Shown: positions 1,110-63,500 of the stretch, piece after piece
Layout: each line of letters opens with the position of its first letter
Position numbering within the stretch: position 1 is the stretch's first letter
Source of the DNA: Octopus sinensis
Lineage: Eukaryota
Length of the DNA stretch: 64,000 bases
Assembly (NCBI RefSeq): GCF_006345805.1
Contig: NC_043014.1
Span: 23,436,001-23,500,000, forward strand
Reading direction: 5' to 3'
The notes under the pieces: model-generated
The model's database searches: none
Seen by the model: the letters and a program-made list of their open reading frames with translations, nothing else
What the model was told of the DNA's origin: nothing
Program-made: the position numbers and the translations under genes

Positions 1110-1972
1110 TGTGTTGAGTCAAAAGTTTTGCAATATTTTGGCAATTTATTTACTTTATTCATCAAGTTAAACAAAAGCAACCTAGAATTCAAAGTAGAGG
1201 TCATCAAATTGCACAGTCTGAATCCACCTTTCTGCCAGTTCTTTGATTCCACACTGACACCAGTTCTTGATCTTTGAGGCAGAGAATTCCTTCATTGAAG
1301 TTTCCGCCTCTTCTTGGTTGATGAAGCATTGTGAGCACAGGAAGTGAACCATGGAATGGAACAAATAATAATTCAAGGGAACTAGGTCCCGTCTATATGC
1401 TGGGTGTGGCATCAGTTTGATTCCCTCAAGTTCCTGAAGTTTATTCCACATCATTTGAGTGGTGTGAGGTCCTATGTTGTCTTGCTGGAGAAAAGCTCAT
1501 TTTCTGTTGGTACTTTTGCCACACAATGTCATACATCTGCTCCAGCAGTTTGGACTACAGGTTGGTATCAATGATTCAAGTCCAGAATGAGCTCTTAGTG
1601 AATTATCACCAGAAGCAGTGCATCACCCTGTGTTCAAAATCCTGTTGCGTAGTGACACATTCTGGAAGCTGACTTTGCTTGACCACTGCATATGCATGTT
1701 AGGATTGCAGAAAAATATCTCCCTCCGATTATTACTTGTTCCAATCCATGGCTCATTTCCTGCACTAGTGACATTTCATCAATCAAGAAGTGGAAGCTTC
1801 AGTGAAGGAGTTCTTAGCTGTGAAAGAAAAGAAATGTTATCAGCGTAGGATCAAAAATGTGGCTTCAAACAGTGCAACATGAAGCTACTTTGAATGTCAA
1901 GCTGCTTTTGTTGTAACTTTATGAATAAAACAAACAAGTTACCAAAATACTGCAAAATTTTTAACTCAAAAC
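1110..1972. mobile_element. Mariner-derived foldback element (two transposase 3' ends in inverted orientation)
   Basis: Minus ORF 1182-1454 is a mariner C-terminus (HPAYRRDLVPLNYYLF ~ HPPYSPDLAPSDYHLF ... LAERW). The same segment recurs on + at ~1715-1960 and the outer ends are reverse complements. Confidence 0.75.
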
Positions 1973-4844: not shown

Positions 4845-7700
4845 AGATGAGATGGAGTTCTGTGATGCGAATAACCTTTTGATCTGCAACACCAACTTCA
4901 GGAAGCCAACCAGCCACCTGATAACCTATCAATTAGGTGACTGCTAGCCAAATAGATTTCATTCTCACCAGACAGTGGGATGCATGGTTGCTCTTAAATT
5001 CAAAGACTCTCTCTGGTGAAGAATGTACACCCCCCCCCTCCACCCCCGCGCTCTCAGCATAGACTAGTCATTAGTGACTTTAGACACCAGGCCAGAACAA
5101 TGCCAAGAAGCAGACTAATCTGGAAAAGAAGGACCTGAAAGTTTAAGGACCCTTCGTATTGTCAGAGGTTTAGGGACATCCTAATTGAGAAGTTTGATGA
5201 CAGGGAGAACCAGCTACAAACTTGTGACATAGAGAGCAACTGGGAAATCTGTGGCTGGTGTAAAGTCCCTTTCAGACCTATGGCTACATGATGGTGGAAC
5301 AATACCATAGACAGGGCCATTAGAGCAAACAGGCCTGAGAGAAGCAGAAAAGAAGAAGTTTGCCTGTGTTCAGCTCCATGAAAACCAACAAACTGAAGTA
5401 TTTCGGATTGCAAGACAATATGTGAAAGAAAATCATGATGTCATAAGAGGGAAATGTGTCCACATGGATGATGGTACACTTGCTTTTAATGATTATGCAA
5501 AAGAAGAAGATTGGAGATGCCATTACGAATGTGGAGAATGAATGGTAGGAGGAGAGTCTGCCAAATGATGACTCAACTGAGGGACCAAATTGACAGTACC
5601 CTGGTAGATAAAGCAATTAAGGATATGAAGACAGGGAAAGCCCCTGGCCCATCAGGAATCACCACTGAGATGCTTAAAATATCTGGCAGTGTGGGTTATG
5701 GTCTAGTCACCTGTATTGTAAATCAGGTGGTTTATGAAGGAGTCATACCCACTAACTGGTGTAATAGCACCATAGTCAACTGCTACAAAGGTAAAGGTTA
5801 AGGTTAGGGTTAGATAGAAATAATTACAGACGTATCAAATTGTTGAATCAGGTAATGAAAGTTGCAGTGATAGTTGTAGTCAAACTAATCAGGGAGAGAG
5901 TTAGTCTATGTAGGAGAGAAATGTGCGGTTTGGCTTTATGCCAGGGAGAAGCACCACTGATGCTATATTTCTTGGAAGGCAACTTCAGGAGAAATACCTA
6001 GCTAAAGATAAACCTCTGTACTTGGATTTTGTTGACTTGGAGAAAGCTTTTGACAGGGTCCCCCCAATCCATTATCTGGTGGTCAATGCCGAAACTAAGG
6101 AAAGATGAGTGGTTAGTCAGAGCTGTACAAGCCTTGTACAGGGATGCTACCAGTAAGGTGAGGGTGTGCAACAAGTACAGCAAAGAATTCAGGGTACAAG
6201 TAGGGGTTCACCAAGGATCGGTACTCAGCCGCCTCTTGTTCACCATAATCCTCCAGGTAATAATGGAGGAATTCAAGATAGGCTGCACTTTGGAGCTCCT
6301 CGATGCTGATGACCTTGCTCTTATAGCTGAATCGCTACCTGAGCTAGAGAAGTTCCAGGTATGGAAACACGGTCTAGAATCAAAGGGCCTTAGAGTTAAC
6401 CTAGCATAAACCAAAGTCCTAGTAAGTAGGTAGATGGACAAATCACAAATCACCTCTCAGGTAGATGGCCCTGCTCAATCTGTAGAAAAGGTGTAGGTAG
6501 AAACTCCATAAAATGCACCCAGTGTAAGCTTTAGACACACAAAAGATGCAGCAACATCAAAGGAAGTTTAACAGAGAAACTAACTTTTGTACGTGGAAGG
6601 TGCACAGGTATAATAAATGCTGAACATGTGAGGAAATTAGATGCCATTAACTGCCAGTGGGGCAAGCTAGAGGTAGTAGATAGCTTCCAGTATCTAGGCG
6701 ACCAGGTTAGTAGTGGAGGTGGTTGTTCTGAGAGTGTAGCTGTGAGAATAAGATTAGGTTGGGAAAAGTTCAGAGAGCTCCTACCTCTGCTCAGAATGAA
6801 AGGCAGATTGTTTGATGCCTGTGCGTGAACAGCTATGCTGCATGGTAGTGAAACATGGGCTATGACAGCCAAGGACATGCGTATGTTTGATAGAAATGAA
6901 GCCAGTATACTTCGCTGGATGTGCAATGTCAGTGTGCATGTTCAACAGAGTGTAAGCATCTTGAGAGAAAAGTTACACATCAGAGGCATCAGATGTGGTG
7001 TGCAAGAGAGACAATTGTGCTGGTATAGTCATGTGATGCATATGGATAGGGACAGTTGTGTAAAGAAGTGCCAATCTCTAACTTTGGAGGTGACCTGTGG
7101 TAGAGGTAGATCAGGAAGACATGGGACAAGACAATAAAGCATAACCTTTGAACTTTGAAATCTCTCAGAGGCAGTGACTAGTGGCCAAGACCTTTGGCGA
7201 TGTGCTCTGCTTTAGGGGATCTGTCAAGCTAAGTGCACACCCATGCTGGTGGTACATAAAAAAAAATCAACCTTGAATGTCAGGCCTTGCAATGGCAAAG
7301 TGGCTGAGTACCTTTCAAGCGTTGGACTGTCAGAGACAAAGTGACTGAGTTCCTTTCGAGGACTGGGCTTCATGGAGGTAAAGTGACTGAGTGTTGGGCC
7401 TCACAGAGGTGAGGTGGCTGAGTTCTTTTCAAGCATTAGGCCTCTTGCTTGAGAAGACCCATCAAGCCAAGCAAAATCACAGTCATGCAGATACCGGTGT
7501 CATGCAAATGGCAGCTATGCCGGTGACATCTAAAAGCACCCATTACACTCTCAGAGTGGTTGGCATCAGGAAGGGCATCCAGCCGTAGAAAACCATGCCA
7601 AATCAGACTGGATCCTGGCACAGCCTTCCAGTGTGCTATCCCAGTCAAACTGTCCAACCCATGCCAGCATGGACAACGGACACTAAATAATCATGATGTA
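4845..7700 (+). mobile_element. RTE-clade non-LTR retrotransposon, 5'-truncated and decayed
   Basis: End of APE domain (NLLICNTNFRKP..HLITY, QIDFIL); RT motifs MKTGKAPGPSGI, FGFMPGRSTTDAIF, DLEKAFDRVP, GVHQGSVLS, LL.ADDL, FQYLGD; many stops and frameshifts; 3' UTR and tail to ~7700. Confidence 0.92.
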
Positions 7701-8150: not shown

Positions 8151-8920
8151 TGTGTGTGTATGTGTATTTGCGTGTAGTTTTGTGTAGAGCTGTTTAATAC
8201 AGAATTGCCGTGAAGTAATGCTACAACTGCTATACATGTACAGACACATTGTAGACCACATCCATAAAAGATGTATTCACCAACATTTTACTATTATTAA
8301 TTCTGTTTCCACCTACCCCTTCTTCCACTACTACTATAAAAGATTTTTCTCTTGAACTAACACACTGAATTCCAACTGCACCTGAACCCACCCTGCTTAA
8401 TCTGCATTATCTCCTTACACCTACACCTCAAAGTCTCATCAAAACACTTTGCTTGCCCTGCAATACTGAAGAACTCCTTTCTTACCTATATTACTATGTT
8501 GATATCAATTTGTAGAAACCAGTCAGATTGATCTTAGCAGCCTTGCTGTGCTGCAAATGTTTGGTCACTGCACTTGTGCTAACACTGAACTTTAAACAAA
8601 AGTATTCATACCGGTGCCATGTAAGGGTGCTCACACCAGTGTCACATTGAAAGCACCCAGTACACTGTAAAGTGAGTGGTGTTAGGAAGGACATCCAGTT
8701 GTAGAAACCATGCCAAATCAAACTGGAACCTGGTGCAGCTCTCCTGCTTGCCAACTCTGGTCAAGCCATCCAACCCATGCATCAAAAATAGACATTAAAG
8801 GAGGAGATGGATGAGAATATATTTGAACTGTTGTAACCATAACAGGTTGCAGTAACTGTGTTTAACATCTGGCTTGTTGTGGCTGCAACACACATATAGG
8901 TTCATTATAAATGGCATTTA

Positions 8921-9316
8921 GAGTGGCTGTGTGGTAAGTAGCTTGCTAACCAACCACATGGTTCCGGGTTCAGTCCCACTGCGTGGCATCTTGGGCAAGT
9001 GTCTTCTGCTATAGCCCCGGGCCGACCAATGCCTTGTGAGTGGATTTGGTAGACGGAAACTGAAAGAAGCCTGTCGTATATATGTGTATATATATATATG
9101 TGTGTGTTTGTGTGTCTGTATTTGTCCCCCTAGCATCGCTTGACAACCGATGCTTGTGTGTTTACATCCCCGTCACTTAGCGGTTCGGCAAAAAAGAGAC
9201 CGATAGAATAAGTACTGGGCTTACAAAGAATAAGTCCCGGGGTCGAGTTGCTCGATTAAAGGCGGTGCTCCAGCATGGCCGCAGTCAAATGACTGAAAAC
9301 AAGTAAAAGAGTAAAA
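8921..9316 (+). mobile_element. tRNA-derived SINE, near full length (family A)
   Basis: A-box TGGCTGTGTGGT, B-box GGTTCAGTCCC, body CTTGGGCAAGTGTCTTCT...GACGGAAACTGAAAGAAGCC, AAAGAGT-like tail. Other copies: ~17570-17695(+), 31672-31920(-), 35748-36075(-), 38722-39030(-), 39531-39670(+). Confidence 0.85.
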
Positions 9317-9401
9317 GTAAAGAGAGTGCTGAATTGATCAAGAAGTGTTTATGAATTTGTTTTGCAAGATTCCTGATGTGGAATCATGTGTTGAAACAGA
9401 T

Positions 9402-9718
9402 ATTGTTATATTTCAGGATGCTTTCCTTTTCTTTTTTTTTTTCTTGCCAAATAAACATACGCACTATATCTTCATTCTTCACTCATTTATTATTATTCTT
9501 ATTTTACCTTATGTTCATTTGTCTGGAAATCTTTCATCAAAATAGGAGGACACACATGGGATGGAAGAGTTGCTGAAGAAGTCACAGGTGTGTGACGAAA
9601 GATTTCCAGACAATGGACATAAGATAAAATATGAACAATGATAAATGAGTGAAGAACGAATATATAGTGCATGTGTTTATTTGGCAGGAAAAAAATGACC
9701 ATCCTGAAATATAACAAT
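9402..9718. repeat. Inverted repeat (arms 9402-9535 and 9597-9718), probable Penelope pseudo-LTR remnant
   Basis: Arms are reverse complements (roughly 80-85% by eye) with a 61-nt spacer containing most of a hammerhead motif. Confidence 0.85.
9569..9611 (+). ncRNA. Minimal hammerhead ribozyme motif (Penelope type)
   Basis: GTTG CTGAAGA A GTCAC aggtgt GTGAC GAAA GATTT C CAGAC: intact core, perfect 5-bp helix II, self-complementary helix III, UUC cleavage triplet. Confidence 0.7.
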
Positions 9719-10000: not shown

Positions 10001-10940
10001 TACGAGAGAAAGTAAAAAATTATCCACACTTTCTCCATAACATCTCTTTATTATTGTCACACTGGCTTTTGCACGTGCATGCTTATAGTTGGTACTATTG
10101 TAGTCATGTGATTGAAGCTTGAGCTTGATTTCGCCAATTTTCTTTCTGGCTTTCTGGCCGCTCCACTACCAATGTGCCCCAAAGAAAAATAAAAAGCAGT
10201 GATCAGATTTCTTTGGTTGGAAGGTATGTTAGGTGCTGAAATTCATTGGAGGCTTTTAGCACTACTGCATAGAAGTGTGTATGAATGGATCAAGAAGTTT
10301 AAAAGTGACCAGACAAACATGGCACATGAAGAGGGAGCAGGACACCCATCAACCTCCACCACTGACAAGAAGATTCAGCAAGTTTGAGAGGTAGTAATGG
10401 TGAATCAGCAAGTTATCATTGATGAGGTAGCTCATTCTCTGCATATTAGTCATAGTTCTGTTTATCAAATCATCCACGACAAGCTCAGCTTCCATAAAGT
10501 CTGTGCAAGATGGGTGCCAAGAGAGCTTACTGCAGAGAAGAAGTGCAAACATCTTGAGGTCTGCCAACGTTTATTCGATTGCTACAACAACAAAGGCAAA
10601 AGATTTTTGAGCAGAATAGTCAAGGAGATGAAACATGGGTCTATCATTATGAGACAGAATCCAAAAGACAGAGTATGGAGTGGAAACATCCTGGCTCGCG
10701 AGCAACAAAGAAATTCAAAACTCTGTCTTCCACAGGAAAGGTGATACTAACCCATTTTTGGGACTCAAAAAGGCCTATACTGGAAGACTACCTGGAAAAA
10801 GGGTGTACAATCAACAGTGCAAAATAGAGTGCTTTGCTGACCAACAAACTGAAACCAGTAATTCACACCAAATGCCGAAGTCTATTGTCAAAGAAAGTTT
10901 TGTTGTTGCATGACGATGCACACCCACACAATGCCAACCA
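10001..10940 (+). mobile_element. Mariner transposon remnant, 3'-truncated
   Basis: TA+CGAG TIR-like start; HTH region, KVCARWVPREL, GDETWVYHYE, LHDDAHPH (~HDNARPH); frameshifted. Confidence 0.88.
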
Positions 10941-11312
10941 TATATTAACTCTGCAATCTGAATTAAAATACCATCAAGTTAGCCTTTCATCATTTTGAAT
11001 TGACAGAGCTGTTGGAGCATTGGGCAAAATGTGTTGTGATATTTGACAACACCCGCAACAACACTGATGTGAAGTTGATCATAGTGAGGACGTTTGATGA
11101 TTGGAATTAGATGATAGTGGTGTTTGTGTTAGTGGAAAATGTTAGATGATAATGAGGATGACTAGAAGTTGATCATCATCATTATCACCACTGTATTTAT
11201 ATTAAAAGTAGAGTTCTTTTTATTCAGATAATCATTTTGAAGGCAACAATAGTCATAATCAAAATTTAGACTCAAAAATATATAATTAATTAACATCTAC
11301 CTAATCCTGTTA

Positions 11313-11525: not shown

Positions 11526-11812
11526 CCTTATCCTAATCCTGTTGTATTAATCTATCTGAGATCACCTTTGTTTCTCTGGAACGAAACTACCTGCTTTAAA
11601 GTGTACATACCTAAATTAAAAACATTCAATCCTTCCAATTTCTTGATCATTTTCAAAATTAATAAAAAATATGTACAGACAAATTATTTCATTAGAAATA
11701 TACTCACGCATCAGCTTGAGTATATTATGTAATCTTATTTTTTTTAAATTAAAAAGCATGTAGATTCATATTTTATGTAAATTCTTCTTACCTTTGGTTT
11801 AATCCATTTCAG

Positions 11813-30616
<18,804 letters not shown>

Positions 30617-34271: not shown

Positions 34272-35641
34272 TATTGGGTCATACCATAAATAATGCAATT
34301 TTTTCAATTACATGAACTAAAAATTAGAGAGGGACAAGATGAACTACCTGCATCAACTTGCTATAAAAGCAGGTAGTAATTTTGCCTTGTCCATATTCTT
34401 AGTGCGAGTTTTGAAGAGTTCAGTTCAATTTTAACAGTTATTTTTTTCATTTATGAATTCAATAAAGATAATGCAATGGAAAACGTGAGGAATATTAATG
34501 CAGTATATGGGGATCAGACAATAAGCGTAAGTGTCAATGGTGTTTCCAGAAATTCTGAGCCAGAAACTACAGCCTAAAAGATTAGCCTTGTCCTGAAAGA
34601 ACTGTAGAGCTTGATGAGGACATGCTGCAAACCCTGGTGGAACAAAATCCCATCGTAACTGTTGAGGAACTAGCAGATAAGCTTGGATTTGGTTATTCAA
34701 CCATTCATCAACATTTGTGTCATTGGAAAAGTCAGAAAATTGGGTCAATGGGTTCCTCACAAAGTTTCCAAGTCTGATCATGTGCAGAGAGTGAACGTGT
34801 GCCCTTCCTTGCTACTATGTCTCATGAATGAACCTTTTTTTGGACTAAATAGTGAATGGTGACGAGAAATGGGTTCTCTATAAAAATGTCAAGCGCCAAA
34901 GACAGTGAGTAGGGAATGGAGAAACACCAGCACCCCAGGCTAAAGAAGGTCTTCATCCATGTAAGGTGTTGTTATCTGTTTGGTAGGATATGAAAGGTTT
35001 AGACCACTTTGAACTTTTAAACCCAAACCAAATGATAACAAAGGATATCTGTTGCGAGCAGCTTGAGTGGCTTAAGTCAATGCTAGAAGAAAAACAACTG
35101 TCTTTGGTTTCGAGACAAAAGGTGTTATTCCATCAGGATAATGCTCGGCCACATACAGTGCCGATAACATTCCAAAGGCTGGAGCAATTTGAATGGGAAA
35201 TGATGCCCCACCCACCATATTCCCTGGACATTGCCCCGTCTGATTATCATTTATTCCGCAGTCAAAAATCATTTGGTCAGAAAAAATATGAATTTTGTAG
35301 ATGAGGTCAGAACAGTACTGAGGAGTATTTTTTCTCACAGACAAGTGACTTTTGGAAGAGAGACCTTGCAAGTCTACCAGAAAGATGGAAGAGTATTGAA
35401 CTAAATGAAGGAGAGTATATTTTAGAGAGAGACCTTGCAAGTCTACCAGAAAGATGGAAGAGTATTGAACTAAATGAAGGAGAGTATATTTTAGAGAGAG
35501 ACCTTGCAAGTCTACCAGAAAGATGGAAGAGTATTGAACTAAATGAAGGAGAGTATATTTTAGATTAAAAAAGAATTTGTTTATCTTAATTTTGAAAAAT
35601 AAAAGTATTAAAAAATGCATTATTTATGGAACGTCCCAATA
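34272..35641 (+). mobile_element. Mariner transposon, full length, decayed, with internal 69-bp triplication
   Basis: TA-flanked TIRs TTGGGTCATACCATAAATAATGC / GCATTATTTATGGAACGTCCCAA; GQWVPHK, GDEKWV, HQDNARPH, HPPYSLDIAPSDYHLF motifs. Confidence 0.92.
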
Positions 35642-36139
35642 TATATATATATATATATACACACACCCACATACACATAAGTGTATGTGTAAATATATAT
35701 GTTTGTACATATGTATCTTTTATCTTTTTATTTTGAATTGGGCTGCGGGCATGCCGGAGCACCACCACTTTCAAGAGTTTAGTCGAACAAATCAACACCA
35801 GTACTTATATTTCCTTCTAAATTTGATATTGTCCTGGCAGTCTGTTTTGCCAAATGCTAAGTTAGCGGAATGAAAACAAACCAGCATCAATTATCAATTG
35901 GTGCTGGCGGACAAACACAAAGACACATACACACACACACTCACACTGAGCTTCTTTCAGTTTCCCACTACCGAATCCACACAAGGTTTTGATCCCAGTA
36001 CTATAGCAGAAGATATCCGCCTAAAGTGCAACCTGGAACTGTGGTTGTGAAGCAAATTCATATCACACAGCCATGTGTATGTATGTATTCAATGTGTGTG
36101 TATATACACATGTGTATTTGTGTATGTACATGTGTGTGT

Positions 36140-36147
36140 GTGTATGT

Positions 36148-36183
<36 letters not shown>

Positions 36184-36184
36184 G

Positions 36185-36269
<85 letters not shown>

Positions 36270-36301
36270 TGTAATATATATAATATATGTATATATATAT
36301 G

Positions 36302-36353
<52 letters not shown>

Positions 36354-36357
36354 TATG

Positions 36358-36412
<55 letters not shown>

Positions 36413-36511
36413 TTATATATATATATATATGTATATCTATATATATGTATATATTATGTATATATATATTATATATGTATATATGTATATATCTATATAT
36501 GTATATATATA

Positions 36512-36553
<42 letters not shown>

Positions 36554-36642
36554 TATATATATATATATCTATATGTATATATATATATATATGTATATAT
36601 AATATATGTGTATATATATATATATATGAGTATATATATATG

Positions 36643-36675
<33 letters not shown>

Positions 36676-36716
36676 GTGTATATATATATATATATGTGTA
36701 TATATATATATATGTG

Positions 36717-36755
<39 letters not shown>

Positions 36756-36946
36756 GTATATATATAATATATATGTATATATAGATATATATATGTATAT
36801 ATTATATATATATGTATATATATATATGTATATATTATATATATATATATTATTATATATATATGTATAGATATATATATATACATGTATATATTATATA
36901 TATATATGTATATATATGTATATATATATATATGTATATATATATG

Positions 36947-37001
<55 letters not shown>

Positions 37002-37131
37002 AATATATATATATATATGTATATATGTATATATATATATGTATATAATATATATGTAATATTATATATATATTATAATATATATATATGTATGTATATA
37101 TATATATGTAATATTATATATATATATATTG

Positions 37132-37166
<35 letters not shown>

Positions 37167-37341
37167 GGATATATATATATATATGTTATATATATGTATA
37201 TATAGATATATGTATATATATATTATATATATGTATATGTATATATATATATTGTATATATATATATATATGTATATATATGTATATATATGTATATATA
37301 TGTATATATATATATATATATGTATAATATGTATATATATG

Positions 37342-37374
<33 letters not shown>

Positions 37375-37614
37375 GTATATATATGTATATATATATATGT
37401 ATATATATGTATTATATATGTATATATATATATGTATATATATGTATATATATATATGTATATATATGTATATATATATATATATATAATATTATATATA
37501 TATATATGTATATATATGTATATTATATATGTATATATATGTATATATGTATTATATATATATATGTATATATATGTATATATGTATATATATATATGTA
37601 TATATATATATAGG

Positions 37615-37647
<33 letters not shown>

Positions 37648-37822
37648 GTATATATATGTATATATGTATATATATATGTATATATATATATATGTATATA
37701 TATGTATATATATATATGTATATATATATATATGTATATATGTATATGTATATATATATATATGTTATATATGTATATATATATATATTGTATATATATG
37801 TATATTATATATATGTATATAT

Positions 37823-37856
<34 letters not shown>

Positions 37857-38025
37857 GATATATGTATATATATATATATTATTATATATATATGTATATA
37901 TATATCTGTATATATATATATCTATGTATATATATATATATGTATATATTGTATATATATATATATATGTAATATATATATGTATATATATTATATATGT
38001 ATATATATATATATGTATATATATG

Positions 38026-38056
<31 letters not shown>

Positions 38057-38072
38057 GTATATATAATATATA

Positions 38073-38115
<43 letters not shown>

Positions 38116-38340
38116 GTATATATATGTTATATATGTATATATATATATGTTATATATATGTATATGTATATATATGTATATATATATATGTAATATATAT
38201 ATGTATATATATATATATTATATATATAATATGTATATTATATATATGTATATATATATGTATATATATATGTATATATATATATTATGTATATATATAT
38301 GTATGTATATATATATATGTATATATATATATATAAATAT
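36140..38340. repeat. ~2.2-kb interrupted (TA)n microsatellite
   Basis: Seen directly; all Y/I/M/C-rich ORFs in the track here are artefacts. Confidence 0.98.
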
Positions 38341-40499
38341 CAGATAAAAGGGAATTTATAAGTCCGAGGTGTATCCTCAGTCAATCCTTCAGCTTACAGA
38401 GTATATAGAAGTGGACGGTTTTTCTGAAAGGAAAGCATTCACACAACCTGAATTCCAAGATTAATTAAATACTTGCAGAATATAATAGAGTAAGTCCAAG
38501 AATGGTATTATATTTATTTTCTTACAGTGTTTTCAACAATATATGGTTCACATACATCATTAATGTAAATATGAATGATTGAATAATATTACAACTTAGT
38601 GTAAGTGATCCATTTCATCTCATCAGACAAAGGTCAAAAACACGTAATTTACCCTTGGAAAATTGATATACATTGTTGTTTGTTAAGATCACAGAATTTA
38701 TTTTTTGCTTGTTTCAGTCATTAGACACCGCTTTGAAGAATTTTTTTTTTTAATGAATCAACCCCAGAACTTTATTTTTTTCGTTTAGGCCTGGTACTTA
38801 TTCTATCAATCTTTTACCAAACTGCTCAGTTATGGGGACATAATCACATCAACAGCAGTGGTAGGGGAAAGACACAAACACACACACAATACAAGAGGCT
38901 TCTTTCAGTTTCTGTCTATTAAATCCACTTGGAAGGCTTTGATCAGCCCAAGGGTACAATAGAAGATGCCATGTAGTAGGACTGAAACTAGAACCATATT
39001 ACTGGGAAGCACGCTTCTTACCACACAGCCACACCTACAACTGTGTATATATCTAAAAAACTAAAGGAGTAATTACTTTTCAAAATAACATGTTTCTATT
39101 GGATGCAAATGACTGATCAATAATATGGAAAGAATATGTAAACATTTATGTGAGTCAAATGAAATTAACTGACAGTATAAATAGTCTATACTTGCAAAAA
39201 CACACATATAAGTATTATTACAAGATATGTAGTATAAGAAGGTCTTTATCAGAAATAAGATGTTGTAAATGATCAAAATATAAATTTAAATGGAAATAAT
39301 AATTAAAACTTAAAATCAAAATAAGAGCAAATGAGTGTGATGAAAAAATAAATAAATGAAAGAATGAATAACTTTAAAATAAACTTGCTATAAGAGTGTG
39401 GAGGAATTTTGCAACTATTGACAATAATATAAGAGAAAGAAAAGAGATATATGTAGACGATAAGAATAAAGGGAAGAATGAAAAAAAATTGTAGTGTGGT
39501 AAAGCATCTGAAATGAGGAGATACACATAACCGTCACTTAGCGGTTCGGCAAAAGAGACCGATAGAATAAGTACTGGGCTTACAAAGAATAAGTCCCGGG
39601 GTCGATTTGCTCAACTAAAGGCGGTGCTCCAGCATGGTCGCAGTCAAATGACAGAAACAAGTAAAAGAGTATATATGTGGAAAATATGTAACATCATAAG
39701 AGAGAGGTGATTGCAACTAGAAAGGAATAATAGTACAGGAAATTAGACAGCCAGCAGTCACAGGCATAATTTATATAATAATTATCATCATTGAGTTTCA
39801 TGCTTGCATGAGTCAGATAGAATTTTGTTGGGGTAAATTTTCTATGGCCAGATGCTCTCCTTGTTGCCAACCTTCCTCTGCAATATTTCCCCATGACCAG
39901 ACATGGAAGATTGGAAGGAAAGTACATTGCTTGCATGGCAGTGATACTTGTTTATGATGTGATGTCAATGCAAGGACACAGTAACCCACACACACACACA
40001 CGTGTGTGTGTGTGTGTGATAATCTGTATAAGTATGGGTTTATAAAATGTGCATGATGAGATATCCTTAAAATAAAAATTAATAAAAGCTGGTTTATATT
40101 GAAAAAAATGTATATATCTATGAGTGTATACAGAGTGTGCATGCATATATATGTTAAACACACAGGCAGTAAAAAGGAGATCATAACAAGATGAGGTAGT
40201 TTGAATTTTAAACTATACTTAGGTATAGCTAAAAAATATTTATGTGCATGAATGTTTACATACAAGCAAACATTGTATGCGTGTGTATCATCCAACATGC
40301 CTTTTTCCATGCTGACATGGGTCGGACAGTTTGATACGATCCCCTGAGCTCCAGGGCCAGATCAATTTCCAGTGTCAGCTTAGACATAGTTTCTGTTGCT
40401 GGATGCCCTTCCTAACACCAACCACTTTACAGGGTGTACCGGGTGCTCTTTTTCTAGCCACCCTCACTAGTGAGATTGCCAAGTAACTTCTCAGATGAG

Positions 40500-53057: not shown

Positions 53058-54578
53058 CACAACATCCTCAATACGCTGCACCCATCTATCAATTTCACAA
53101 TAGATACCAGCCACAACGAACTTCCCTTCCTAGACATCAACATCAAAATACACAACTCCATCGTCACAACAGACATCCACTACAAAAAAACTGACACACA
53201 TCAATACTTAAATTTCCACTCCTGCCACCCATCCCACACAAAAAGAAACATCCCATATAGTATGGCACGACGAATATGTAGCATAGTAACTGATTCACAA
53301 ATACGATTAATAAGACTAGATGAACTCAAAAGCTTCCTCCTAGAGCAAAAATACCCCCTTAAACTAATAGAAAATGGAATCACAAGAGCATTAAAACTAG
53401 ACATCACACAACTCAGGACACCCAAAACAAAAAACAAAGAAAACACTATCCCTTTTATAAACACACACAACCCTGGAGTTACCAACATCTTCCAAACCAT
53501 ACATTCAAACCTACCAATAGCCTTACAGAGCCCCAAAATGAAAAACATATTAAACAAATATAGCATAAAAAACAGTAGACGACAGGACAAAAACCTAAAA
53601 AAACACCTAACAAGAGCGAAATTCTCTTCAGAAACTAAAACGGAATTCTTTGCAAAAGAGTGCGGAGATGGTAGATGTGGGACCTGCAGCAACCCCACCT
53701 ACAAATACATAGAGAGCAACAGAGAGATAAGATTTAAAAATGGTGTCATATTCAAAGTAAATGCAGATATGAACTGCAAGACGCAGAACGTCATATACTG
53801 CATAACCTGCCCCACATGCAAGGAGAATTACGTAGGAGAAACTGGTAATTCTTTGTGCCAGCGAGCCAGGATCCACCGACAACATATTCGGCAGGAAGAA
53901 CTACGCAAAATACCACTAAGCACACACCTAGCTACATGTGGAGAAGGAAAATTTAAGATATTTCCCTTCTACAAGTGTCCGAAGAATGACACCCCCTTCA
54001 GGAGGAATATGGAAAAACATTTCATAGCTAAGTTCTCCCCCAAATAAATGGCTGAAACTTTACTCAACATACATTGAAGGAAAAATCTGTGTGTGTGTAG
54101 ATGTGTGTATTGCCTGTTATATACATCATATTATATTATTATCTTTATAATTCACTTCCATCTTTACCCTTTAATTGTCACTTTAGTTTTAACTTTCCTA
54201 TGACATACAACTTTCAAGATGGTATAATTTGGTTGTTCATTTTGAACCGATAAAAAGGTTTTTTCAAATATTTTATGTATAAGTCTGTGTGTGTGTATAT
54301 ATATGTGTTGGTATAAATATCAACACACAAAAATATTTTTTCTTCTCCACTTCCTCCCTTATTTTTATTTTATTTTATTTTTTATTTTTTTATTTTTTAT
54401 TCTTTATATTTTTATTTATTCTTTATATTTTTTTATTTTATTTTTTATTTTTTGTTTTTATTTTATTTTATTTTATTTTTTTATTTTTTTAATTTTTTAT
54501 TTTTATTATTATTATTTTTATTTTCCCTTTTCTCTTTTTGTCTCTCTCCCCTTCTCCAAACACACAGACACACACACA

Positions 54579-55724: not shown

Positions 55725-57570
55725 TCTGAACATCTCCCCAGCTGAACTCTCAGTCCTTCGATGTCACTGATGCCGCACTGACATCATCATAAAACCGGCT
55801 GACAAGGGTGGAGCTGTGGTGATGTGGCGCACAGACCTCTACAAGGCCGAAGCCCTCTGCCCTCTAACCCCACGACCAGCTACCAACAGACTGTGTCCTC
55901 CACTATCCATGACCTTATCTTTTCTTCTTGCCTCCCCCACCACCTCAACCTCATTGTCCACACCCCTTGCACCCCCACTGTTTACTTCCTCCCAAAAATC
56001 CACAAACCTAACAACTCTGGCCACCCCATCGTCTCCGCCTGCAACTGCCCCAACAAACTCATCCCCAGATATCTTGACCATGTCCTTGCCCCCCTAGTGG
56101 CTTCCCTCCCCTCTCACATCCATGATACCAACCACGTGCTTCGTTTGTTCAACTCTTTCTCCTTCCCTCCTGGCCCCTCTAAACTTCTCTTCACTCTCGA
56201 CATCCAGAGCCTTTACATGGTGATCCCTCACGAGGGGCTGCGTGCACTCCAACATTTCCTTGACCTTCGACCCAACCCCCAACCCGACACATCCACACTC
56301 ATTTGTCTGGCTGAACTTGTCCTCTCACTCAACTGCTTCTCATTCACTGGTGATTTCTACCAGCAGTCTTAGGGGTCGCCATGGGAACAAGAATGGGCCC
56401 CAACTATGCAAACCTGTTCGTTGGCTACGCTGAGGCCCAAATATTCTCAATTTCCCTGGTCACACTCCCGAACTATATGGCCATTACATTGACGACTGTA
56501 TCAGTGCGACCTCACTCTCTTGCAAACATCTGGACTCCTCCTCTTTTGTCAAATCTTTCCATCCTGCCCTCCACTTCTCCTGTACAATCACATCACCAAC
56601 TCCTTCACCTGCACTTCTACCAATGTCATCTATTGCATCACCTGCTCTCTCTGCCCTTCTCTGACCAGTTCGCAGAACACCTCCGAGACATCTGACTCAG
56701 CAATGATACCCCGGATGGCACCATTTCCACTCTACCGGTCACTCTTTGCAACATCTGTCTGTGTTCGGATTGTCCTTGTACAGGGGCCATCCGGACTCCA
56801 GTTTGCACCATGAACAGGGATTAATCTTCTTTCTTCACTCCTTTGCACCAAATAGGCTCAACTCTCCTCCCATCTTCATCTAACCTCCTCGCCTTGCCTC
56901 TCTCCCCCTCATACCTACTTTTTTCCACCCACCTCTCCTCTCTTGCTCCGATTCCTACTTCTCTTCACTCCTACCCACCTTTTCCTTCCCCCTTCTTTCG
57001 TAACCCCACCTCACCCCTATGCATTCCAACCCCACTTTCCCTATCCCTCCCATCCACCCCACCCTTACACCCACTCCCACATACCCCACCTCTACCCCCA
57101 CCTTCAGTCTAACCCACGCCCCACCCTTGCTTTCCACTCTTGCCTCCCTCACCTCCCAACACCATCACACTACTACACCATACCACATTTCACATCACAG
57201 CACCATGCACAGACCACTTCCCAGCCCCACACCTTAAAACCTACACATATAAACATCAAGGTCACCAGCCCTCTTCCAAACACACATACTCTCTTATACA
57301 CACACATACGCACCTTCGTTTTGGGATCACTACTACTTTATTATCTCCCTTTCTTCCAAGCTCTCCTGTGTGACCCTTCTGTCCGGCATTCGCCATAATA
57401 GATCACTAGCCACTACATATTCTTTATTTTCTCTCTTTGTTTCTTTCTGTGTTCCTTACTGTGGAAGAGCATAGGCTCGAAACGTTAAAGACTTTTTCAC
57501 TTCTCAAGCATCAAACTAATACATCTGTTTGTTGTCTACACCACCTGTCTACGTCTTTTGTTTTTTTGTG
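55725..57570 (+). mobile_element. Penelope-like element, decayed and internally deleted
   Basis: IIIKPADKGGAVVMW, YFLPKIHK, HPIVS, LFTLDIQSLY, GVAMGTRMGPNYANLF, YIDD; jumps at ~56582 to the GIY-YIG start (TCTSTNVIYCITC); 3' terminal repeat with hammerhead-like motif. Confidence 0.9.
57455..57490 (+). ncRNA. Degenerate Penelope-type hammerhead ribozyme motif
   Basis: CTTA CTGTGGA A GAGC atag GCTC GAAA CGT T AAAG: 4-bp helix II, palindromic ACGT helix III; core A6 is T and the first helix I pair is mismatched. Confidence 0.5.
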
Positions 57571-60545: not shown

Positions 60546-63500
60546 TAATAAGACTTTCTGTTATTTCTGCCCTTCTTACACTCTCTTTCTAGATAAATGC
60601 CACCAAAGGAAAGACCTTTCATTGGACGCAGAACACAGGAAGCGGTTCGACAAGCAAGAAGGAGGTCAAGGAGTCAGCCCAACGGAACAACTAACCATCC
60701 ATTACCGGTGTCACTTGTGTCCCCATTCAACTACTGGCATACCATTCGTCAGCTATGCAAAACAGCTTCACAAGCTGCTGCTCGAGCATCTGAGAGTGAA
60801 GACCAGCGCACTGACCACAGATCTTGAAATGCTGCTGAAACGGACGAACAGCATAGCCTGCGCCTGCTTCGAAACACCAAAGCGACTGCTGCTGCATGGG
60901 CTGATGCAACAGAAGGTCAACGAGCACTATGCTGGTCCCATGATGCGGCATCAAGGGCTTCCACATGAGCTGCCGAACCTGAACCAGCGACGTTCTCAAT
61001 GACAGTCCAGCAATGCAGCCTCAACAGCATCAACCCGAGCTGCTGAAACACCAGAACAGCATTCATGACAGCGGTCACGTAATGCTGCTTTAACTGCATC
61101 TGCGCGAGCTAACAAATCTGAACAGCAACGTACTTAACAACAGTCCAGCAACACAGCCTCTGCAGCTGCTGTTCACAATGCTGAAGCCAATGAAGAAAGA
61201 CAAAGTCGCTTTGCAGCTTCTTCCGCCTGATGAACCCTCCAGCAGGGTCTATCTGTTCCGTGCAGTACACGATGGTTAAGGGAAGCATTTGATTATAATC
61301 ATGATTGTGATTACGCCCAACACCCCAACTTGATGATTTCCTCTATGCAAAAAGTTTGCCCATTCTGCAATGCAAGGAAATAGCCTGGAGAACCATCTGG
61401 TATGTACTGTTCAAATGCAAAGGTTCTCCTTTCCATTTTGGACAACCCACCTGAGCCATTGTGATATCTTTTAACAGGTGCAGACGACGAATGCCGGCAC
61501 TTCCAGAGCAACATGAAAAAGTATAACTGCGCCTTTCAGATGACATCATTTGGTGCGAATATTGTTAGGGAAGGCAGCTTCATGCCTACATTTAAAATTC
61601 AGGGGCAGATTTACCAGATTTCTGGGGCAGAATTGGACCCCTTCAACCTGCTGCCAACGAAACACCGTAGTTTCTCCAGGTGTACTTTGTCGGTGACTAC
61701 AAAACATAAGCAGCACGCCAAAGAACTATCTCCCCCAGCACAAATTTGGAAGTGATTCTTCAACTCCAAGAAATGTTGCACATGCATAACTCCTACGTAA
61801 AGAGCTTTAAGTATGCTTTGGAATTTCCATCAGTGCCGGACTTCACAGTGGTTATTGACGCTGACAAACGGCTGGCAAATAACCATTCTGTAAAGTGCAT
61901 CAATGAGACACACAGAGCATATGACGTGCTCCAATATCCACTTCATTTTGTGCGCGGAGAAGATGGCTACCACCTGGGTCTTCAGCAGCGGGTGCTGCGC
62001 AGACAAAACGAAACGAGTACCAAACAAGTTTTGTGCAAGCAGTTCTACTCATACTCTGCCACAACTGCACTAACCACCTCCAGCGATTGTGCGACCTGTT
62101 CCACCAATTTGCCGTGGATGTTTATGCAAAAATGGAATCTGAGAGGTTATCCTATATCAGGTCTAACCAGCAGAAACTTCGATCAGACAGCTACATCCAT
62201 CTTAGGGATAGTCTCAGTAATGACGTATCACCTGGAGGGTTGGGTCAGGTGTGCATCTTGCTGTCATCTTTCACCAGCGGCCCACGTTACATGCACGAAA
62301 GAACTCAAGACGCAATGATATCCATCCGCTACTACGGGTGTCCTGACTTATTTATCACCTTCACCTGTAATCTTAGGTGTGGAGAGATTGGATTAGAACT
62401 TTTTCAGGGTCAGCAGGCCAATGAGAGACATGATCTCATTGTGTGGGTCTTGCATTTGAAGTTACACAAACTCATCAACCTCATCACCAAAGGCTAAATA
62501 TTTGGCCCCATGCGATGTGACATGTATACCGTCGAATGGCAGAAAAGGGGTCTTCCTCATGCTCATATCCTAATTTGGTTGTCCACACGGATTGCATCCA
62601 ATGCAATTGACAATTTGATCTCAGCCGAGTTCCCTGACCCTGCTATCAACAGGACTCTCTTTGAGATAGTGAAGGATTACATGATCCATGGCCCCTGTGG
62701 ACAAGGATTCAACCTTCGATCAGTTTGCAGCGAGAAATACCCAAAACAATTCCTCCAGGAAACACAATCTGGGCACGATGGGTACCCTCTGTACAGACGA
62801 AGGAAACCAGAGGATGGTGGATTCACAGCGCATATTGATCCGTATGAAATAGGCAACAGATGGATAGTGCCTTACTGCCCAATCCTGTTGAAGGTATTCA
62901 ATGCTCACATAAATGTCGAGCTCTGCAATTCTGTAAAGTCCATCAAGTATGTGTGCAAGTACATCAACAAAGACTGATGCTGCTGTGTTTGGCCAGCAAC
63001 CAGATGGAGTCTTGAGATGGAATAACACAATACCATGTAGGCAGGTACATAAGTAGTAACGAAGCCTTCTGGTGAATTTTCAGGTTTCCACTGCATCAAA
63101 GGCATCCACCAATCCAGCAGCTTGCAGTGCACCTTGAAAACGGCCAGCGTGTGTACTTCACCGCTTCCACTGCAGCCTGACTGATTGAGCAACCAAAAGA
63201 TACAACACTCACGGCTTTCTTCAAACACTGCCATGTAGACCTGTTTGCAAAAGATCTGTTTTATCCTCAAGTCCCATCATACTACACATGCAATAAGTGT
63301 AAGTGGCAGCGAAGAAAGTCAGGCCAAACCGCTGATGGTCACCCTCAGATCAAATTTGATAATTGCCTCGGCATACTGTACACGGTTCACTCGAGCCAAC
63401 ATGCGTCTACCTCCAATTGCTGTTTCACTAGGTAAGGAGTCCAAAGCCCTTTGACCAATTAAAGACCATGAATGGGCATACATGTGCTACGTTCAGGGAG

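What the first reader, a model, noticed from the sequence alone, without database searches (positions are those of the whole stretch)
9569..9611. Intact-core hammerhead ribozyme on the sense strand of a probable ihog intron
Seen: CTGAAGA-A-GTCAC(aggtgt)GTGAC-GAAA-GATTT-C, with a short helix I (GTTG pairing CA[G]AC). All core nucleotides are present, helix II is a perfect 5 bp, and helix III (AGAUUU) is self-complementary with G-U pairs. Established: Penelope-like elements carry minimal type-I hammerheads with palindromic helix III that cleave as dimers. Inference: predicted cleavage after C9606 could cut the ihog pre-mRNA, and the motif marks a Penelope family with no ORF left here.
Basis: partly seen in the sequence, partly recalled or inferred. 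Interest (0 to 1): 0.7.

Follow-up and report, generated by a model that had tools for sequence, protein, structure and literature searches.

The report
Relic retroelement hammerhead in an intron
The hammerhead-ribozyme letters are really there, but they belong to an old, decaying copy of a Penelope-type mobile element inserted as a head-to-head pair in an intron of an ihog-like gene, and at this site the ribozyme is very unlikely to cut anything, so the finding is real but ordinary.

Summary
The motif at 9569-9611 (+) is exactly as described and has a complete hammerhead core. It also has three traits published for Penelope-like-element (PLE) minimal hammerheads: an extra base between A9 and G10.1, a G10.1-C11.1 pair, and a long helix II (6 bp, not 5). 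Chance gives about 0.005 loose hits per shuffled window and 0 of 2600 as good as this one. No Rfam hammerhead model matches.

I found the same roughly 175-nt unit at four loci in a related species. There it occurs as single copies, a head-to-tail tandem and head-to-head pairs, so the inverted repeat is two copies and not a MITE. The family consensus keeps an intact minimal hammerhead. Every other copy carries a core mutation, and there is no covariation beyond shuffles.

Verdict: this is a neutral relic of a PLE/retrozyme-like non-autonomous element, a new member of a known kind. Cleavage of the ihog-like pre-mRNA is unlikely for three reasons:
- There is no dimer partner.
- The helix I and GAAA side of the motif is locked in a -27 kcal/mol stem.
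- Published monomers of this type are inactive.

No link to a PLE ORF was shown.

The parts
9569..9611 (+). Minimal type-I hammerhead motif. Helix I 3' strand GUUG (9569-9572); C3-A9 CUGAAGA (9573-9579); extra A (9580); helix II GUCACA-GGUG-UGUGAC (9581-9596; G10.1 = 9581, C11.1 = 9596); G12 A13 A14 A15.1 (9597-9600); GAUUU (9601-9605; U16.1 = 9605); C17 (9606; predicted scissile bond 9606/9607); helix I 5' strand CAGAC (9607-9611).
   Evidence: Sequence read; helix II fold; only descriptor hit in the window; scores 80.4 bits against the family covariance model R1 (it is one of the sequences R1 was built from); no Rfam hammerhead hit.
9540..9718 (+). Right copy: about one unit (179 nt) of the repeat family, carrying the hammerhead. 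It is 5'-truncated relative to the longer copies L041 and L042 and ends ...CATCCTGAAATATAACAAT.
   Evidence: 77-79% identity over 149-184 nt to L041 145-321, L046 647-815 and L042 315-456; nhmmer E=2e-47.
9402..9539 (-). Left copy of the same unit in the opposite orientation. It is 5'-truncated inside the helix II 3' strand (the minus strand reads TGATGAAAGATTTCCAGAC...), so it lacks the CUGAAGA half of the ribozyme.
   Evidence: Alignments A1 and A3; nhmmer E=3e-26 on the minus strand; 14 mismatches and 2 gaps against the right copy.
9345..9401 (-). 3' extension of about 55 nt ('tail'-like) attached to the left copy only. It is homologous to the extensions in L042 and L044 and is absent after the right copy, L041 and L046_A.
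   Evidence: BLAST of window 9347-9539 to L042 259-432 and of 9356-9490 to L044 707-829; shared pseudo-ORF FMNL.C..PDV..C; alignment A3.
9402..9718 (.). Inverted repeat formed by the two copies: arms 9402-9539 and 9593-9718, apical loop 9540-9592. As RNA it is a roughly 135-bp hairpin that buries the GAAA box, helix III and the 5' strand of helix I.
   Evidence: the repeat finder I1-I3; MFE -152.3 kcal/mol, z = -17; inner stem -27.4 kcal/mol, helix I pairing probability 0.00.
11812..12030 (+). Context: internal exon of the Ihog/Boc/Cdon-like gene (start of Fn1), preceded by the acceptor ...ccatttcag. Further exons lie at 16401-16594, about 18006-18210 and about 18560-18800.
   Evidence: Pfam fn3; PDB 2ibg/2ibb Ihog Fn1-Fn2 E=1.4e-21; acceptor site and the 16.4-kb exon; orthologous contig L001 at 86-88% identity.

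Best explanation
The motif is the hammerhead of one copy of a short (about 175-nt unit), ORF-less retroelement family of the Penelope-like-element / non-LTR-retrozyme kind.

Shown:
- The element sits on the sense strand about 2.2 kb upstream of an internal exon of an ihog-like gene (its intronic position is inferred from that exon).
- It is a head-to-head pair: a left copy on the minus strand, truncated inside helix II and carrying a 3' extension, and a right copy on the plus strand that is about one full unit.
- The family consensus is an intact minimal type-I hammerhead.

Inferred:
- In master elements the ribozyme worked as a dimer formed between adjacent units of tandem or pseudo-LTR transcripts, cutting after C17 to process the retroelement RNA.
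- The copies are now decaying neutrally, and the window copy has kept all core bases by luck.
- At this locus the ribozyme is effectively idle. There is no second sense copy to build helix III. Helix I is only 3-4 bp. The left arm is transcribed first and pairs with the 3' half of the motif as soon as that half emerges, giving a long intronic hairpin instead of a hammerhead.
For: Motif anatomy. The core is complete, with an extra A between A9 and G10.1, a G10.1-C11.1 pair, a 6-bp helix II and a short helix I. These are traits that Cervera & de la Pena report as emerging in PLE minimal hammerheads beyond their descriptor (PMC4209133). A hit this good did not arise in 2600 shuffled windows.

Family. 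Pseudo-ORF searches found four independent loci in Logan assemblies of a species that is 86-88% identical at orthologous DNA. The unit aligns at 77-79% identity. The consensus reads GTCG CTGAAGA G GTCACA GGTG TGTGAC GAAA GATTTC CAGAC. The core boxes are the best-conserved columns, at 79% pairwise identity against 60-66% in the flanks.

Architecture. L041 and L042 are single-orientation copies, so the palindrome is not intrinsic to the element. L046 has an inverted copy plus two head-to-tail units about 162 nt apart. L044 is another head-to-head pair. The 3' extension is present at one end only. L041 and L042 abut CA-rich microsatellite sequence. Craig et al. describe 5'-truncation, partial tandems, an adjacent inverted 5'-truncated copy, a tail at one end and a microsatellite bias as PLE hallmarks (PMC8557442). 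PLE ORF remnants occur elsewhere in the window.

Inactivity here. Helix I has probability 0.00 in the hairpin context. Single minimal hammerheads show no detectable cleavage in vitro.
Against: - No RT/GIY-YIG ORF is linked to the unit in the window or in the 1.1-1.7-kb contigs. The PLE remnants at 53-57 kb share no sequence with it.
- No Rfam hammerhead model matches.
- There is no covariation beyond shuffles in six copies. The single double change (C-G to U-A in helix I) is two CpG transitions.
- The helix III palindrome (AGAUUU, with two G-U pairs) holds in the window copy but not in L042 or L046_C (AGACUU).
- Only seven or eight copies were seen, all apparently dead.
- No cleavage data exist.
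- The 55-nt extension is longer than the published 30-40-bp PLE tail.
Confidence: 0.72

Rival explanations
1. The repeat family is real but is not Penelope-related and never encoded a ribozyme. On this view it is a SINE-like or other non-autonomous element whose master sequence happens to contain hammerhead-like boxes.
For: No ORF linkage was found. There is no covariation and no Rfam hit. All copies descend from one master, so the family consensus counts as a single draw from chance. The helix III palindrome is not conserved across copies.
Against: The consensus has the full core plus the extra base, G10.1-C11.1 and a 6-bp helix II; 0 of 2600 shuffled 64-kb windows reach that. The core boxes are the most conserved columns. 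Three of five loci show inverted and/or tandem arrangements. This is a PLE hallmark; from general knowledge it is not typical of LINE-mobilised SINEs.
Confidence: 0.15
2. The hammerhead is active at this locus and cuts the ihog-like pre-mRNA after C9606. It would do so either in trans-dimer with other family transcripts or when the hairpin is opened, lowering or regulating ihog output.
For: The core is intact, on the sense strand and in an intronic position. It is the only copy of eight with no core mutation. From general knowledge, intronic hammerheads with proposed roles in mRNA biogenesis exist in amniotes.
Against: There is no cis partner for helix III. Helix III would be six A-U/G-U pairs. 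Helix I is 3-4 bp. The competing stem is -27.4 kcal/mol, against -6.2 kcal/mol for the hammerhead secondary structure. Published single minimal hammerheads are inactive and dimers are weak. Survival of 12 core bases at the observed divergence is unremarkable (about 0.3-0.5 by my own rough estimate). The two arms differ at 11% of aligned positions, as expected for neutral decay.
Confidence: 0.05
3. The structure is a MITE or foldback DNA transposon whose loop contains a chance hammerhead-like string.
For: There is a 317-bp near-palindrome with 88-100% complementary arm segments, and the hairpin is very stable. Sub-threshold Rfam matches to long plant miRNA hairpins reflect only that shape.
Against: Family members L041 and L042 are single-orientation copies without the partner arm. 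The 'loop' 9540-9592 is homologous to those copies and is therefore part of the right copy. No target-site duplication or terminal inverted repeat signature was found at 9402/9718. Tandem units exist in L046.
Confidence: 0.03

Closest known systems
Minimal type-I hammerheads of metazoan Penelope-like elements (Cervera & de la Pena 2014, PMC4209133)
   Same: CUGANGA...GAAA core; an unpaired base between A9 and G10.1; G10.1-C11.1; a long helix II (6 bp, as in D. virilis); a short helix I; almost no helix III, with a self-complementary 15.1-16.1 stretch that implies dimeric action. Found mostly as dispersed, variable, ORF-less copies.
   Different: The palindrome needs two G-U pairs and is not kept in all family copies. 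No pseudo-LTR flanking an RT-EN ORF was seen. No activity data exist.
Metazoan non-LTR retrozymes (Cervera & de la Pena 2020, PMC7229834; Li et al. 2026 preprint, 10.64898/2026.07.22.740005)
   Same: A small AT-rich unit (about 162-179 nt) with a type-I hammerhead that can occur head-to-tail (L046 B-C). The preprint argues that such elements are non-autonomous PLE derivatives.
   Different: Retrozymes are defined by tandem arrays carrying canonical hammerheads, and their circRNAs are predicted to fold stably. Here only one two-unit tandem was seen, the hammerhead is the minimal kind, the unit alone is not notably structured (z = -1.5), and the window locus is an inverted pair, not a tandem.
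PLE insertion architecture (Craig et al. 2021, PMC8557442)
   Same: 5'-truncation, an adjacent inverted 5'-truncated copy forming an inverted repeat, partial tandems, an extension at one end only, and proximity to microsatellites.
   Different: The extension here is about 55 nt, against 30-40 bp in the paper. The autonomous partner is unidentified.
Conserved intronic hammerheads of amniotes (Rfam HH9/HH10)
   Same: A sense-strand hammerhead inside an intron of a protein-coding gene.
   Different: Those are canonical, monomer-active, single-copy and conserved across species. This one is a repeat-derived minimal motif with no Rfam match.

Membership tests
Hammerhead ribozyme, minimal type-I (PLE variant) | Conserved core C3 U4 G5 A6 N7 G8 A9 / G12 A13 A14 / A15.1-U16.1 / H17 | tested here: met
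   All positions are present at 9573-9579, 9597-9600 and 9605-9606. The family consensus is also intact.
Hammerhead ribozyme, minimal type-I (PLE variant) | Helix II closed by G10.1-C11.1, with one unpaired base between A9 and G10.1 | tested here: met
   A9580 is unpaired; G9581-C9596 starts a 6-bp helix. Feature list taken from PMC4209133.
Hammerhead ribozyme, minimal type-I (PLE variant) | Helix I of about 4-5 bp flanking the core (2 bp in D. virilis) | tested here: inconclusive
   There are 3 contiguous pairs plus 1 across a bulge. Helix I cells are paired in 67% of family copies.
Hammerhead ribozyme, minimal type-I (PLE variant) | Palindromic 15.2-16.2 / loop 3, allowing a dimeric helix III | tested here: inconclusive
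   AGAUUU is self-complementary only with two G-U pairs. The GAAAGAUUUC self-duplex is -5.6 kcal/mol. L042 and L046_C have the non-palindromic AGACUU.
Hammerhead ribozyme, minimal type-I (PLE variant) | Compensatory variation in the helices among family copies | tested here: not met
   The covariation score is 0.180 against a shuffled mean of 0.182. The one double change is explained by CpG decay. Only six decayed copies were available.
Hammerhead ribozyme (Rfam hammerhead families) | Match to a curated covariance model | tested here: not met
   No hammerhead hit at gathering thresholds, at E<=10 over the window or at E<=10 locally. From my own knowledge, Rfam models the canonical forms, so a miss on the minimal PLE form is expected.
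Hammerhead ribozyme | Site-specific self-cleavage giving 5'-OH and 2',3'-cyclic phosphate ends | not testable with these tools
   Needs transcription and cleavage assays or end-specific RNA sequencing.
Penelope-like element | RT plus GIY-YIG ORF belonging to the same element | tested here: inconclusive
   No ORF was found in L041 or L042 or next to the window copy. The window's PLE ORF remnants at 53-57 kb share no sequence with the unit. The contigs are only 1.1-1.7 kb long.
Penelope-like element | Complex insertions: 5'-truncation, partial tandems (pseudo-LTR), an adjacent inverted 5'-truncated copy | tested here: met
   Window inverted pair; L046 inverted copy plus tandem; L044 inverted pair; longer copies L041 and L042. 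Criterion from PMC8557442.
Penelope-like element | Hammerhead located in the terminal repeat | tested here: inconclusive
   The predicted cleavage site lies 112 nt from the unit's 3' end. However, no terminal repeat (pseudo-LTR) flanking an RT-EN ORF was seen in the window or in the contigs.
Non-LTR retrozyme | Tandem array of units, each with a complete type-I hammerhead (at least two consecutive) | tested here: not met
   The window has no tandem. The L046 B-C tandem has a deletion in B and U4C in C.
MITE / foldback transposon | Terminal inverted repeats intrinsic to every copy, flanked by a target-site duplication | tested here: not met
   L041 and L042 are one-armed copies. No target-site duplication at 9401/9719.

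The most novel reading that the evidence does not exclude
The head-to-head insertion has created a hairpin-gated ribozyme in the ihog-like pre-mRNA. While the 135-bp stem is closed the hammerhead is off. When the stem is opened or destabilised (by helicases or A-to-I editing of the dsRNA), or when abundant family transcripts supply a helix III partner in trans, the intron is cut after C9606 and transcript output falls. Separately, the family could be an undescribed retrozyme-like circRNA producer in this lineage.
Probability: 0.03. Interest if true: 0.7.

Novelty: new member of a known kind. Interest (0 to 1): 0.3.

Why it matters
Minimal hammerheads of Penelope-like elements are already known to occur by the thousands in animal genomes, so one more relic copy changes little. 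There are three useful points. First, a hand-spotted hammerhead can be separated from chance by finding its repeat family: here the consensus is an intact ribozyme, while the individual copies decay neutrally. Second, the local context (an inverted partner copy) can silence an otherwise intact core, which should temper predictions that intronic transposon-borne ribozymes cut host transcripts. Third, the family gives a concrete roughly 175-nt query for cataloguing PLE/retrozyme-type elements in this invertebrate lineage.

Tried and rejected
- Rfam at gathering and at E<=10, over the whole window and locally: no hammerhead hit. The only local hits are sub-threshold plant miRNA-hairpin models, caused by the long inverted repeat.
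- Other copies in the window: BLAST, nhmmer with the family profile, and a family covariance model with filters off found only the two arms. The 10.8-bit hit at 19299-19374 lies in the 3' end of a mariner-like ORF and is chance.
- Exact k-mer scans of metagenome contigs (19-mer) and viral contigs (17-mer): 38 loci, all k-mer coincidences, with no extended homology.
- A word-indexed protein search with the 72-aa pseudo-ORF found nothing. The profile version returned only three proteins already known. The exhaustive HMMER search is what found the family.
- MITE hypothesis: rejected (one-armed copies; the loop is homologous to the family).
- Target-site duplication search at 9401/9719 and at the tail end 9345: nothing convincing. 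The 17-nt direct repeat 9330-9346 / 10282-10298 is not a simple target-site duplication, because the sequences further out on either side are unrelated.
- Linking the unit to a PLE ORF: no ORFs in L041 or L042. Block X, shared by L041 and L042, is absent from the window.
- Rod-like fold of the unit, as in retrozyme circRNAs: not supported (z = -1.5).
- Organism identification: the run accessions appear in no held paper. The upstream SINE looks octopus-like from memory only.
- Supplementary hammerhead alignments of PMC4209133 are not held, so no direct sequence comparison with published PLE hammerheads was possible.

Full report
**Observation**

| Element | Sequence | Coordinates |
|---|---|---|
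| Helix I, 3' strand | GTTG | 9569-9572 |
| C3-A9 | CTGAAGA | 9573-9579 |
| Extra base | A | 9580 |
| Helix II with loop | GTCACA-GGTG-TGTGAC | 9581-9596 |
| G12-A15.1 | GAAA | 9597-9600 |
| Helix III region | GATTT | 9601-9605 |
| H17 | C | 9606 |
| Helix I, 5' strand | CAGAC | 9607-9611 |

- Helix I has three contiguous pairs and a fourth across a bulge.
- A monomeric helix III cannot form. AGAUUU is self-complementary only with two G-U pairs.
- No Rfam hammerhead model matches: not at gathering thresholds, not at E<=10 over the window, and not at E<=10 in a 271-nt local scan.

**Chance**

- I wrote a descriptor loose enough to admit this candidate: CUGANGA, 0-1 inserted base, helix II of at least 4 bp, GAAA, hairpin or palindromic helix III, UH, and helix I of at least 3 bp.
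- It finds only this site in the window on either strand.
- It hits 14 of 3000 dinucleotide-preserving shuffles of the window.
- None of the 2600 shuffles gave a hit with the extra base, G10.1-C11.1 and a helix II of at least 6 bp.
- The descriptor is post hoc. Across a genome of tens of thousands of such windows, on the order of 100 loose chance hits are expected, so this statistic alone cannot decide the matter.

- The 3' half of the motif (TGACGAAAGATTTCCAGACAA, 9593-9613) is the inner end of the right arm of a large inverted repeat. The arms are 9402-9539 and 9593-9718, and the loop is 9540-9592.
- As RNA the 331-nt region folds into one hairpin of -152 kcal/mol, z = -17.

**Published features of PLE hammerheads**

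- Cervera & de la Pena (PMC4209133) describe minimal hammerheads in Penelope-like elements (PLEs) with a long helix II (6-8 bp) and a short helix I (4-5 bp, or 2 bp in D. virilis).
- They also report a conserved unpaired base between positions 9 and 10.1, a conserved G10.1-C11.1 pair, and palindromic 15.2-16.2.
- Single motifs gave no detectable cleavage, and dimers gave low activity.
- The candidate shows the extra base, G10.1-C11.1 and the helix proportions.
- Craig et al. (PMC8557442) describe PLE insertions as highly 5'-truncated and often partially tandem. Often an inverted 5'-truncated copy lies immediately adjacent, forming inverted repeats. A 30-40-bp tail occurs at one end, and there is a bias toward microsatellites.

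**Finding the family**

- The window holds no further copy.
- Exact k-mer scans of metagenome and viral collections gave only coincidences.
- Gene callers run on raw assemblies call spurious ORFs, so I searched with the 72-aa pseudo-ORF that runs antisense through the right arm. The word-indexed search found nothing.
- The exhaustive HMMER search found four pseudo-ORFs (P0002, P0004, P0005 and P0006). A fifth hit, P0003, is a repetitive 673-aa protein that I judged unrelated from its sequence.
- Their contigs (L040-L047) represent four loci, each seen in two sequencing runs. They come from a species whose orthologous ihog-region contig L001 is 86-88% identical to the window.
- The unit aligns to window 9538/9544-9718 at 77-79% identity. 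The 'loop' of the inverted repeat is therefore simply the 5' part of the right copy.

**Architecture of the family**

- L041 and L042 are single-orientation copies. They continue upstream through CA-rich microsatellite-like sequence into a shared block. The palindrome is therefore not intrinsic to the element, and the window's right copy is 5'-truncated relative to them.
- L046 carries one copy on the minus strand abutting two plus-strand units in head-to-tail tandem, with about 162 nt between equivalent positions.
- L044 is another head-to-head pair.
- The window's left copy, L042 and L044 carry a homologous extension of about 55 nt after ...AACAAT. The window's right copy, L041 and L046_A lack it.
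- These are the PLE hallmarks listed above, and they exclude a MITE or foldback origin.

**The hammerhead across the family**

- The consensus of six copies is GTCG CTGAAGA G GTCACA GGTG TGTGAC GAAA GATTTC CAGAC, an intact minimal hammerhead.
- Every non-window copy has at least one inactivating core change:

| Copy | Core change |
|---|---|
| L041 | G12A |
| L046_A | G12A plus others |
| L046_C | U4C |
| L042 | G5A |
| L044 | A9G |
| L046_B | 10-11-nt deletion covering helix II's 5' strand and part of the CUGAAGA box |

- Counting pairs on the alignment gives 75% paired cells, against about 30-44% when the partners are slid. There is no covariation beyond shuffles (0.180 against 0.182) and only one double change.
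- That double change (C-G to U-A in the window's helix I) is TCG to TTG together with CGG to CAG, i.e. two CpG transitions, so it is not evidence of selection.
- Mean pairwise identity is 79% in the core boxes, 66% over the whole motif, 60-61% in two of the three remaining blocks of the unit (75% in 9651-9690), and 41% at the 5' edge. This is a weak hint that the core was constrained in master copies.
- The helix III palindrome is not kept in L042 or L046_C (AGACUU).

**Activity at this locus**

- The hammerhead secondary structure of the isolated 54-mer is -6.2 kcal/mol, against an MFE of -10.9 kcal/mol for an alternative fold.
- The GAAAGAUUUC self-duplex is -5.6 kcal/mol, and the competing pairing with the left arm is -27.4 kcal/mol.
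- In the 331-nt context helix I has pairing probability 0.00 and helix II 0.19.
- The left arm is transcribed first, so the hairpin also wins kinetically (inference).
- The only other copy nearby is antisense and lacks the CUGAAGA half, so no cis dimer is possible.
- Together with the published inactivity of single minimal hammerheads, cleavage of the host transcript is unlikely.

**Host gene**

- The plus-strand exons at 11812-12030, 16401-16594 and about 18006-18210 encode two FN3 domains.
- These match Drosophila Ihog (CG9211) Fn1-Fn2 over their whole length (PDB 2ibg/2ibb, E=1.4e-21), and match Cdon and Boc more weakly. The query's middle exon was taken from L001; the window's own exon is nearly identical.
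- The 11.8-kb exon has a splice acceptor and encodes an internal domain, and no upstream exon of the gene was recognised in 1-11.8 kb.
- The motif is therefore very probably in a long intron, on the sense strand. This is an inference; the upstream exon lies outside the window.

**Age**

- The two window copies differ at 14 of 126 aligned positions plus two gaps. This is similar to the orthologous divergence from the related species, consistent with one old insertion event decaying neutrally.
- If the animal is an octopus (my recollection of the adjacent SINE, unverified), this would fit the PLE expansion at Jukes-Cantor distance of about 0.2 reported for Octopus vulgaris (PMC13282606).

**Verdict**

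The motif does mark an ORF-less family with a PLE-type minimal hammerhead and PLE-type insertion architecture. Strict PLE membership (ORF linkage) is not shown, covariation is absent in the small sample, and the predicted cutting of the ihog pre-mRNA is improbable.
- This is a new member of a known kind, of modest interest.

Noticed in passing
window 53262-54047 (+) and 55824-56813 (+): Two Penelope-like-element ORF remnants in the same orientation. The first ends with a CxxC linker and a GIY-YIG domain (Pfam PF01541, E=7e-6). The second has RT-like sequence followed by a second 'NVIYCITC' GIY-YIG-like stretch. No hammerhead was found beside them, and they share no sequence with the 9.5-kb unit.
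   Followed up: partly
window 8900-9328 (+): A SINE-like repeat ending in a GTAAAA-type tail lies immediately left of the hairpin element. From memory it resembles the abundant octopus SINE, which would make the host a cephalopod. This is unverified.
   Followed up: no
window 9330-9346 and 10282-10298: A 17-nt direct repeat (16 of 17 identical) brackets the hairpin element plus 560 nt. The right copy lies inside a mariner-like HTH ORF, and the sequences further out are unrelated, so it is not a simple target-site duplication. Unexplained.
   Followed up: partly
window 9402-9718: The head-to-head pair would give a near-perfect dsRNA stem of about 135 bp in the pre-mRNA, a plausible substrate for A-to-I editing or small-RNA production, independent of the ribozyme question.
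   Followed up: no
window 12520-15957: A stretch of about 3.4 kb carrying integrase- and RT-like ORFs on the minus strand (12865-15000) is absent from the related-species contig L001. L001 781-948 matches the window on both sides of it (within 12128-12520 and at 15957-16123). This indicates a lineage-specific retroelement insertion with a flanking duplication in the next ihog intron.
   Followed up: partly
window 10193-11000 (+), 34990-35304 (+), 1182-1454 (-), 19150-19420 (-): Several mariner/Tc1-like transposase remnants. The one at 19.3 kb produced a chance 10.8-bit hit to the family hammerhead model.
   Followed up: partly
window 36000-38350: About 2.3 kb of TA/CA-type microsatellite. Together with shorter tracts elsewhere, it accounts for the many sub-threshold 'mir-297/mir-3149' Rfam matches, which are artefacts.
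   Followed up: no
window 61746-62977 (+); 5311-7137 (+): Helitron-like Rep/helicase N-terminal ORFs at 61.7-63.0 kb, and a reverse-transcriptase (PF00078) fragment at 5.3-7.1 kb. Together with the other repeats noted here, they show a very transposon-dense region.
   Followed up: no
L041 681-874 / L042 1175-1361, and the CA-rich tracts L041 330-680 / L042 480-1170: The two longer family copies share an upstream block of about 190 nt, separated from the hammerhead unit by CA-rich microsatellite-like sequence of different lengths. The full element may therefore be at least 0.7-1.2 kb with an internal microsatellite, or the copies may have inserted into microsatellites.
   Followed up: partly
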